Origin: Schmidtea nova
Lineage: Eukaryota
Direction of reading: 5' to 3'
Length of the DNA stretch: 64,000 nt
Assembly (NCBI GenBank): GCA_044892505.1
Contig: JBJFYY010000010.1
Coordinates: 1 to 64,000 of the forward strand
Both the position numbers and the translations under genes were made by a program. Below, in pieces: positions 60,905 to 61,340 of this stretch (position 1 is its first letter; each line of letters starts with the position of its first letter). Below the pieces are notes generated by a model. The model did no database searches. It was not told where the DNA came from and was given only the letters and a program-made list of their open reading frames with translations.

Positions 60905-61340
60905 AATCAGTTCCCCCTTCTATAAGGGACAAGATCCGGTCGTCTCGATTGTAGTTCGGCATTGACTGATGGTATCGCGAGGTGCATTTATTTAATTCTT
61001 TCAATGTTTTCTTGTTTACGAGCTAGTATAGGGTATCCTTGGATATTTTTGGTATTTGTCTAGCTAGTTAGTAAATGAGTTCGATCTCTAATATACTATT
61101 TGATGTTTTCAAAATTCGTTCATGCATAACACTTATTGAAGACTCAACATACTAATGTTGGAGAACACTCAATTAGTAAGGATATCGATTTGTAGATTGA
61201 TCTAGTGAAAAACTCGGGGAGCCCGACCGAGGAAACAGGGTGGGTGCTGTCCCTTCGAGGACTATCATCCTTGCGGGGGCAAGTTAGCTCTGGCGAATCT
61301 ACTACCGGTTATTACCACCCTGTATGCAGACTACGAGTAC
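60905..61340 (+). mobile_element. Diverged homologue of the R2-site non-coding element, lacking ribozyme and a ~240 bp internal block
   Basis: Collinear shared blocks, e.g. ATACTAA(T)GTTGGAGAAC, GAAAAACTCGG, CCGAGGAAAC, TGGGTGCTGTCC, CCGGTTATTACCA. Confidence 0.8.

What the first reader, a model, noticed from the sequence alone, without database searches (positions are those of the whole stretch)
61192..61340. Compensatory base changes reveal a conserved RNA fold shared with the 3' end of the R2-site element
Seen: 60.9-61.3 kb (+) is collinear with the R2-site element (-). The 9-bp helix ACGTGATGG/CCATCACGT (22789-22797 with 22724-22732) becomes ACAGGGTGG/CCACCCTGT (61235-61243 with 61315-61323), three fully compensatory pairs. 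CTCGG/CCGAG, GTCC/GG(G/A)C, TTAGC/GC(T/G)AA and a closing GTAGATTG helix are also retained. The outer three-way junction has GAAAC and GUA as in a hammerhead but lacks CUGANGA. Inference: a selected ~150 nt RNA domain, either an RT-recognition 3' structure or an unclassified ribozyme-like motif.
Basis: partly seen in the sequence, partly recalled or inferred. Interest (0 to 1): 0.72.

Follow-up and report, generated by a model that had tools for sequence, protein, structure and literature searches.

The report
Conserved 3' RNA fold of planarian R2
The last ~145 bases of a planarian rDNA-specific jumping gene (R2) and of its gene-less parasites fold into one RNA shape that evolution has kept through matched base changes; this is most likely the handle by which the element's reverse transcriptase picks its own RNA for copying, a known kind of signal in a new animal group.

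Summary
At the stated coordinates the 9-bp helix differs between the two copies by three fully compensatory pairs, and the other helices are there.

The genome holds at least 45 copies of this ~145-nt domain in several diverged lineages.
- Covariation: 20 of 39 modelled pairs show changes on both sides, including 8 of 9 in the long helix. This is far above column shuffles, slid-partner controls and a tree-aware null.
- Fold: a three-way junction. A closing helix (P0/P1) carries hairpin P2 and long helix P3; P3 encloses hairpin P4 and an irregular, non-covarying P5.

The domain is the extreme 3' end of an R2 element. One R2 copy sits in the 28S R2 site on contig C39, has an open frame of 1025 aa (phmmer E 1e-125 to Bombyx R2) and ends in this domain. 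Copy A is the tail of a ~840-bp non-coding derivative. Copy B is a 5'-truncated, ~600-nt R2 tail outside 28S.

Best reading: this is the cis-acting 3' UTR module that the R2 reverse transcriptase recognises for target-primed reverse transcription. That function is inferred, not shown.

The hammerhead or ribozyme idea finds no support: no Rfam hit, and no CUGANGA core.

It is a new member of a known kind. Another note of this scan (s1-385658) had already described copy A's element.

The parts
61188..61344 (+). Copy B of the 3' domain (full match to covariance model R1). It lacks helix P0 and ends ...GAGTAC outside 28S.
   Evidence: Model match of 117.8 bits, E 1.8e-25 and 1.1e-29; sequence read.
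22703..22847 (-). Copy A of the 3' domain: the last 145 nt of the non-coding element in the 28S R2 site. 28S (TAGCCAAATGCC) resumes at 22702.
   Evidence: Model match of 178.6 bits; sequence; 28S flank aligned.
61192..61199 (+). P1 5' strand (GTAGATTG). It pairs with 61327-61334 (CAGACTAC), with one A.A mismatch and one wobble in B. In copy A the pairing is 22843-22836 with 22720-22713.
   Evidence: RNAalifold and MFE folds. The third pair changes AU to GC in 3 sequences and AU to UA in 6.
61327..61334 (+). P1 3' strand.
61213..61231 (+). P2 hairpin, CTCGG ... CCGAG (copy A: 22820-22801).
   Evidence: Two pairs covary (GC, AU, UA, GU types), tree-aware E 0.003 each and 0.007-0.013 on a structure-blind alignment.
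61235..61243 (+). P3 5' strand, ACAGGGTGG (copy A: 22797-22789).
   Evidence: 8 of 9 pairs have changes on both sides across 31 copies.
61315..61323 (+). P3 3' strand, CCACCCTGT (copy A: 22732-22724).
   Evidence: coordinates read.
61249..61280 (+). P4 hairpin. In B it is GTCCC/GGGGC with an 18-nt insertion in its loop. In A it is GTCCT/AGGGC at 22783-22770.
   Evidence: 3 of 5 pairs covary (UA/CG/AU; CG/UA; CG/GC). The insertion is seen by comparison with L005.
61282..61299 (+). P5, irregular helix (GTTAGC ... GCGAATC; in A 22768-22748). The sequence is conserved, with no significant covariation, and one position is unpaired in 14 of 30 copies.
   Evidence: Helix 6; no significant pair.
61300..61314 (+). 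Nearly invariant unpaired stretch (..ACT.CCGGTTATTA..) between P5 and the 3' strand of P3. It is a candidate protein contact (inferred).
   Evidence: Invariant columns.
60736..61340 (+). 5'-truncated R2 fragment: the last ~55 nt of the R2 reading frame plus a ~550-nt 3' UTR. Its last part is copy B.
   Evidence: blastn to two R2 copies starts at 60735/60736.
59834..60736 (+). Internal fragment of an unrelated, very abundant LINE with a restriction-like endonuclease (Ulp1 protease + RT + CCHC + endonuclease). It abuts the R2 fragment and is not the partner of the tail.
22703..23545 (-). Non-coding R2-derived element at the 28S R2 site (of the SIDE type, short internally deleted element) that carries copy A. 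I did not map its 5' boundary; 23545 is approximate.

Best explanation
The stretch is the terminal ~145-nt RNA domain of the 3' UTR of a planarian R2 retrotransposon lineage.

Fold: a three-way junction. The closing helix P0/P1 joins the 5' border of the domain to its last ~25 nt. Hairpin P2 follows an A-rich linker. A 9-bp helix P3 encloses hairpin P4, the irregular helix P5 and an invariant unpaired CCGGUUAU stretch.

Proposed mechanism: R2 is transcribed together with 28S rRNA. The R2 protein binds this domain in cis, through its shape plus the conserved unpaired bases. It nicks the 28S target and uses the nick to prime reverse transcription from the RNA's 3' end (target-primed reverse transcription).

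Non-coding derivatives such as copy A keep this domain and so borrow the enzyme. Copy B is a dead, 5'-truncated insertion of an older sublineage.

Shown: the fold's conservation by compensatory change, its position at the 3' end of coding and non-coding R2-type elements, and the spread of such elements. Inferred: protein binding and the role in priming.
For: 1. Structure under selection.
- MAFFT alignment of 19 copies: 9 pairs change on both sides, and 0 of 500 shuffles reach four of the five measures.
- 31 copies aligned to the model: 20 of 39 pairs change on both sides, 128 such cells against 36 in shuffles, and 8-27 with slid partners.
- My tree-aware null: summed G of 545 against 121 +/- 30. 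On a structure-blind MAFFT alignment it is 494 against 145 +/- 34.

2. Position. An R2 copy in the 28S R2 site on contig C39 has an open frame of 1025 aa (937 aa fetched). It matches RVT_1 and scores phmmer E 1.2e-125 to Bombyx R2 (PDB 8gh6). Its 3' UTR ends in this domain, directly before TAGCCAAATGCC.

3. Retention in parasites. The ORF-less ~840-bp element (copy A) keeps the domain. It is 89% identical to that R2's last ~630 nt, and has copies in several rDNA units and about 20 copies outside rDNA.

4. The helper and the parasite differ in P2 and P3 by compensatory changes, while the junction bases (GGAAAC, GAGUA, CCGGUUAU) stay the same.

5. Precedent. The R2 protein initiates only on RNA carrying its own 3' UTR, binds a small structured core, and 3' UTRs of different R2 lineages share structure but not sequence (PMC10499050, PMC11194090, PMC12222951).
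Against: No binding, priming or probing data exist for this RNA.
- No RNA run of this organism was available. The four runs that hold the element are of unknown kind and kept as contigs.
- The fold shows no evident likeness to the Bombyx core (P1, J1/2 kink, P2, A-rich 3' tract), and its 3' end is paired in P0 instead of single-stranded.
- Each copy's predicted folding energy is only modestly better than shuffles (z about -1.5).
- P5 has no covariation.
- All sequences come from one genome, and many copies are close kin, so the count of independent events is smaller than the count of cells.
Confidence: 0.75

Rival explanations
1. The domain mainly protects or defines the RNA's 3' end. It would act as a stable cap against 3'-to-5' exonucleases once the R2 RNA is freed from the 28S co-transcript, not as the enzyme's recognition site.
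For: Helix P0 pairs the last bases of the element with the domain's 5' border, and this pairing covaries (pair 2-177: CG, AU, UA, GU types). The whole domain is compact and G+C-richer (about 0.5) than its surroundings.
Against: This does not explain why gene-less derivatives that spread through the genome keep exactly this module. Known R2 systems use the 3' UTR for template choice (PMC10499050). The two roles do not exclude each other.
Confidence: 0.12
2. It is a self-cleaving ribozyme (hammerhead-like or of a new class) that cuts the R2 RNA out of the 28S co-transcript at the 3' junction.
For: It has a three-way junction with conserved unpaired GGAAAC and GUA-like bases. How R2 RNA gets its 3' end is not known (PMC12222951).
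Against: No ribozyme family of Rfam 15 reaches E = 10 at either copy. The hammerhead core CUGANGA is absent in both copies and in 30 of 31 members. Copies outside rDNA often continue with T, TAG or TGGCC after the terminal GGCGG, as if templates ran on into 28S.
Confidence: 0.04
3. The apparent covariation is an artefact of shared ancestry and of fitting the alignment to the model, so no RNA structure is under selection.
For: An all-against-all scan of columns finds many 'covarying' pairs outside the model, caused by the split into two main clades. Alignment A4 was fitted to the structure.
Against: Controls that keep relatedness fall far short: slid partners give 0.04-0.08 against 0.336, and the tree-aware simulation reaches at most 225 against 545 observed. 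The signal persists on MAFFT-only alignments. The covarying pairs form contiguous antiparallel stacks. At least four different P3 versions are each self-complementary.
Confidence: 0.03

Closest known systems
Bombyx mori R2 3' UTR RNA (helices H0-H5; ~40-nt core bound by the NTE-1 helix of the R2 protein)
   Same: Both lie at the extreme 3' end of an R2 element in the 28S R2 site. Both have a structure first inferred from covariation. Little primary sequence is shared among lineages. The proposed role is the same: template choice and positioning for target-primed reverse transcription (PMC10499050, PMC11194090). The planarian R2 protein is a clear homologue (E 1e-125).
   Different: There is no detectable sequence or model similarity. 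The planarian fold is a 145-nt three-way junction whose 3' end is paired (P0), whereas Bombyx has an A-rich single strand leading into the active site. Binding is not tested here.
Zebra finch R2 (R2Tg) 3' pseudoknot element (terminal 67 nt)
   Same: Both are compact terminal 3' UTR elements conserved within their host group. [quoted passage not shown]
   Different: No pseudoknot is supported here. The one candidate (GUAGAUU with the internal AAUCUAC) shows no covariation. The planarian domain is about twice as long.
Drosophila R2 SIDEs (short internally deleted, non-autonomous R2 derivatives; recalled from Eickbush and Eickbush 2012, not read here)
   Same: Copy A's element has no ORF, sits in the R2 site, and keeps the 3' end of the autonomous R2.
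   Different: The host phylum differs. About 20 copies also lie outside rDNA. The helper and the parasite tails differ by compensatory changes.
Hammerhead ribozyme
   Same: Three helices meet at a junction with a GAAA-containing strand.
   Different: The CUGANGA core is absent, no Rfam hammerhead model matches, and the helix lengths and the enclosed P4/P5 are unlike a hammerhead.
Shared 3' stem-loops of 'stringent' LINE/SINE pairs (for example eel UnaL2/UnaSINE1; from my own knowledge)
   Same: A non-autonomous element borrows a LINE's enzyme by carrying the LINE's 3' RNA structure.
   Different: Those are single short hairpins in endonuclease-APE LINEs. Here the structure is a multi-helix domain in a site-specific R2 with a restriction-like endonuclease.

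Membership tests
R2 3' UTR recognition RNA (functional class) | Lies at the extreme 3' end of an R2 element, next to the 28S target half-site | tested here: met
   The C39 R2 and copy A end in GGCGG followed by TAGCCAAATGCC. The R2 protein is confirmed by RVT_1 and E 1e-125 to PDB 8gh6.
R2 3' UTR recognition RNA (functional class) | Secondary structure conserved among lineages through compensatory changes | tested here: met
R2 3' UTR recognition RNA (functional class) | Specific binding by the cognate R2 protein, and requirement for target-primed reverse transcription | not testable with these tools
   This needs EMSA and priming assays. It is inferred only from retention in gene-less mobile derivatives.
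Any curated Rfam family (including R2 element and ribozyme families) | Covariance-model match | tested here: not met
   Only chance-level matches (E 4-10, far below gathering scores) at both copies.
Hammerhead ribozyme | Conserved catalytic core CUGANGA ... GAAA around a three-way junction | tested here: not met
   GAAA is present, but CUGANGA is absent in A, B and 30 of 31 members.
Hammerhead ribozyme | Self-cleavage | not testable with these tools
SIDE-type non-autonomous R2 derivative (copy A's element) | No coding capacity, but the R2 3' end is retained and the element sits in the R2 site | tested here: met
5'-truncated R2 insertion (copy B) | Collinear with the 3' part of a full R2 up to its 3' end, with the 5' part missing | tested here: met
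   Homology starts at 60735/60736, inside the last ~55 nt of the R2 frame. What lies upstream is an unrelated LINE fragment.

The most novel reading that the evidence does not exclude
The domain is a new class of self-cleaving or self-processing RNA that frees the R2 transcript from the 28S co-transcript at its 3' side. A related possibility is a switch: the GUAGAUU strand would alternate between its covarying 3'-terminal partner and the invariant internal AAUCUAC, hiding or exposing the template's 3' end.
Probability: 0.05. Interest if true: 0.8.

Novelty: new member of a known kind. Interest (0 to 1): 0.38.

Why it matters
R2 proteins are being developed for site-specific gene insertion, and the 3' UTR element decides which RNA they copy. 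So far such elements are understood only for a silkmoth and for birds.

This finding adds a well-supported fold from a distant phylum (flatworms), not in Rfam. It also comes with a natural experiment: gene-less derivatives that show what the enzyme needs in cis, and helper and parasite tails that differ only by compensatory changes.

It gives a ready covariance model for annotating R2-derived repeats in planarian genomes. For a specialist it is expected, not surprising.

Tried and rejected
- Rfam at a permissive threshold on both copies: only chance-level hits.
- Hammerhead core search: absent.
- The ORF just upstream of copy B as the tail's own gene: rejected. It is an internal fragment of an unrelated abundant LINE whose full copies lack the tail.
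- The idea that the domain mimics 28S rRNA, prompted by a forced LSU model alignment: local alignment to the window's own 28S scores no better than shuffles.
- Pseudoknot of GUAGAUU with the internal AAUCUAC: 94.6% paired but with no covariation, and the internal partner is altered (a base missing) in the diverged group of copies. It is not excluded as an alternative conformer.
- Model search in the two closest R2 relatives outside this genome for which DNA could be fetched (35-36% protein identity, Logan contigs): nothing.
- Model search beside the second R2 family of this genome (54% protein identity): nothing.
- Expression: no RNA run on record. The four runs that hold the element are of unknown kind and kept as contigs, so they show neither RNA ends nor expression level.
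- RNAalifold on the 110 nt upstream of the domain: no consensus structure.
- Single-sequence folding energies are only weakly better than shuffles.

Some loci fetched from the genome carry letters where the window reads N. I did not read, print or search those stretches.

Full report
**Setting.** The window is ribosomal DNA of a planarian. Rfam finds three 18S, three 5.8S and several 28S pieces, all on the minus strand. Earlier notes of this scan name the animal as a flatworm.

The 28S gene at 22109-26097 is interrupted at the classic R2 site. On the minus strand the insert ends ...GAGTAGGCGG at 22703, and 28S resumes with TAGCCAAATGCC at 22702.

**The observation.** I read both stretches. The 9-bp helix is at the stated coordinates in both copies. 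It differs by three fully compensatory pairs: G-C to A-T, T-A to G-C and A-T to G-C. CTCGG/CCGAG, the GTCC hairpin, TTAGC/GC(T/G)AA and GTAGATTG are present in both. A 26-base motif spanning the junction occurs only at these two places in the window, with none expected by chance.

- In copy B the middle pair of the TTAGC helix is an A.G mismatch.
- B's version of the GTCC hairpin is best read as the stem GTCCC/GGGGC seen in a sister lineage, with an 18-nt insertion in its loop.

**A genome-wide family.** A DNA search of the window's own genome with copy B returned 35 matches of 70-100% identity on the three large chromosomes and on several rDNA contigs.

A MAFFT alignment of 19 distinct copies gave the following:
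- RNAalifold recovers a nested closing helix, P2, P3 and P4.
- On my six-helix structure, 93.9% of cells pair and 9 pairs show changes on both sides.
- 0 of 500 column shuffles reach four of the five measures, and partners slid by 1-3 columns fall far short.

I built a covariance model from this alignment and searched the genome with it. It found 45 matches, including a much more diverged group at 35-94 bits.

With 31 usable copies aligned to the model (I left out four whose ends are replaced by unrelated DNA):
- 20 of 39 pairs have changes on both sides, 8 of 9 of them in P3.
- The covariation score is 0.336, against 0.150 in shuffles and 0.04-0.08 with slid partners.

An all-against-all column scan showed many spurious "covarying" pairs caused by the two main clades. 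I therefore wrote a tree-aware null: FastTree for the tree, the parsimony number of changes per column re-placed on branches in proportion to their length, and a G statistic.
- Model-fitted alignment: the summed statistic over the 39 pairs is 545, against 121 +/- 30 (maximum 225 in 300 simulations). Five pairs are individually significant at E < 0.05 and five more lie at 0.06-0.13.
- Structure-blind MAFFT alignment of the same 31 sequences: 494 against 145 +/- 34.

The fold is therefore under selection.

**The fold.** It is a three-way junction.
- P0 (3 bp) and P1 (8 bp) join the domain's 5' border to its last ~25 nt.
- After an A-rich linker comes hairpin P2.
- After GAA comes the 9-bp P3, which encloses hairpin P4, an irregular P5 and a nearly invariant unpaired stretch containing CCGGTTAT.

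The partner of GTAGATTG is the 3'-terminal CAATCTAC. That pairing changes AU to GC in three copies and AU to UA in six. A second complement, AATCTAC inside the P3 loop, is invariant. It pairs in 94.6% of cells but shows no covariation, and it has lost a base in the diverged group.

P5 is conserved in sequence but does not covary, and one of its positions is unpaired in 14 of 30 copies.

**What the domain belongs to.** The open frame just upstream of copy B (59857-60789) is not its gene. Its DNA (59834-60736) is an internal piece of a very abundant LINE. Full copies of that LINE encode a Ulp1-type protease, a reverse transcriptase, a CCHC knuckle and a restriction-like endonuclease. Their frame runs on for another ~230 aa, and they do not carry the tail.

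Homology to R2 starts at 60735/60736. The real owner is an R2 lineage:
- On contig C39 an element sits in the 28S R2 site.
- Its open frame is 1025 aa, of which 937 were fetched. It matches RVT_1 and scores phmmer E 1.2e-125 to the Bombyx R2 protein of PDB 8gh6.
- It has a ~1.7-kb 3' UTR that ends in this domain, directly before TAGCCAAATGCC.
- A decayed R2 on chromosome 1 carries the tail most like copy B, at 82% identity.

Copy B is thus a 5'-truncated, ~600-nt R2 tail of an older sublineage outside 28S. It is present in three copies of one duplicated block.

Copy A is the tail of a ~840-bp element without any ORF. It is 89% identical to the last ~630 nt of the C39 R2. It occurs in several rDNA units and as about 20 mostly full-length copies at non-rDNA sites.

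**Mechanism.** In R2 elements studied so far, the protein initiates only on RNA that carries its own 3' UTR and binds a small structured core. Lineages share structure and not sequence (PMC10499050, PMC11194090, PMC12222951).

The planarian domain has the right place, and the right evolutionary behaviour: helices drift by compensation while junction bases stay fixed. It is also exactly what gene-less mobile derivatives retain. I therefore read it as the cis-acting recognition and priming module of this R2 lineage (confidence about 0.75). Binding and priming are inferred.

Many copies outside rDNA continue with T, TAG or TGGCC after the terminal GGCGG. This would fit templates that run on into 28S, as is known to help priming in other R2s.

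**Rivals.**
- A 3'-end protecting role is compatible with P0 pairing the last bases, and may coexist with recognition.
- A ribozyme has no support: no Rfam ribozyme match even at E = 10, and no CUGANGA.
- A pure ancestry or alignment artefact is excluded by the controls above.

**Limits.**
- All sequences come from one genome.
- The nearest R2 proteins in public data are only 35-36% identical, and the 3' regions of the two whose DNA could be fetched do not match the model.
- A second R2 family of this genome (54% protein identity, many open frames) has a different 3' side.
- No RNA run was available.
- Some fetched loci show letters where the window is masked. I did not read or use them.

**Verdict.** It is the 3' UTR module of a planarian R2 and its parasites: a new member of a known kind, of moderate interest.

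Noticed in passing
window 59834-60736 (+); full copies in L033 and L035: Internal fragment of a very abundant LINE with a restriction-like endonuclease. More than 2,500 candidate places were seen at the first look, and open frames reach 1247 aa. The ORF combines a Ulp1/Peptidase_C48 domain, a reverse transcriptase, a CCHC knuckle and a PD-(D/E)xK endonuclease, which resembles NeSL. It abuts the R2 tail at 60736, and the reading frame stays open across the joint by chance.
   Followed up: partly
G000:C10:73511-76303 (just outside the window; L092), plus many other places: A second R2 family, 54% identical in protein to the C39 R2, with many open frames of ~1009-1015 aa in rDNA contigs and on the chromosomes. 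Downstream of its ORF lies a weak 28S-like stretch (LSU model 1891-2388, 70 bits). True 28S follows only from model position 2389, about 110 nt beyond the R2 site. Model R1 finds no match there.
   Followed up: partly
window 61140-61180 (+); copy A about 22890-22855 (-): Just upstream of the domain, two conserved interleaved complements (CUCAAC with GUUGGAG, and ACUAAU with AUUAGU) could form an H-type pseudoknot.
   Followed up: partly
window 61392-61441 (+): A 50-base piece downstream of copy B is 94% identical to 5419-5468, 15191-15240 and 29644-29693, which is spacer next to the 5' end of each 18S gene. Copy B therefore lies in scrambled, rDNA-derived sequence at the edge of the array.
   Followed up: no
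L012, L013, L016, L021, L024, L025, L027, L030, L076, L081-L087 (3' junctions): In copies outside rDNA the base after the terminal (G/T)CGG is nearly always T, and sometimes TAG or TGGCC follows, like the 28S half-site TAGCC. Either the templates carry a few 28S bases, or insertion favours 28S-like sites.
   Followed up: no
window 61254-61275 (+): Copy B and its two duplicates carry an 18-nt insertion in the loop of hairpin P4 that no other lineage has. The insertion is tolerated at the tip of a helix, as expected for an exposed loop.
   Followed up: partly
window 33-60 kb (+): A ~4.85-kb unit is repeated five times at 99.7-100% identity (37333-59795). The units are interspersed with masked stretches and hold internal repeats of older, 75-92% identical pieces. 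I did not analyse this array.
   Followed up: no
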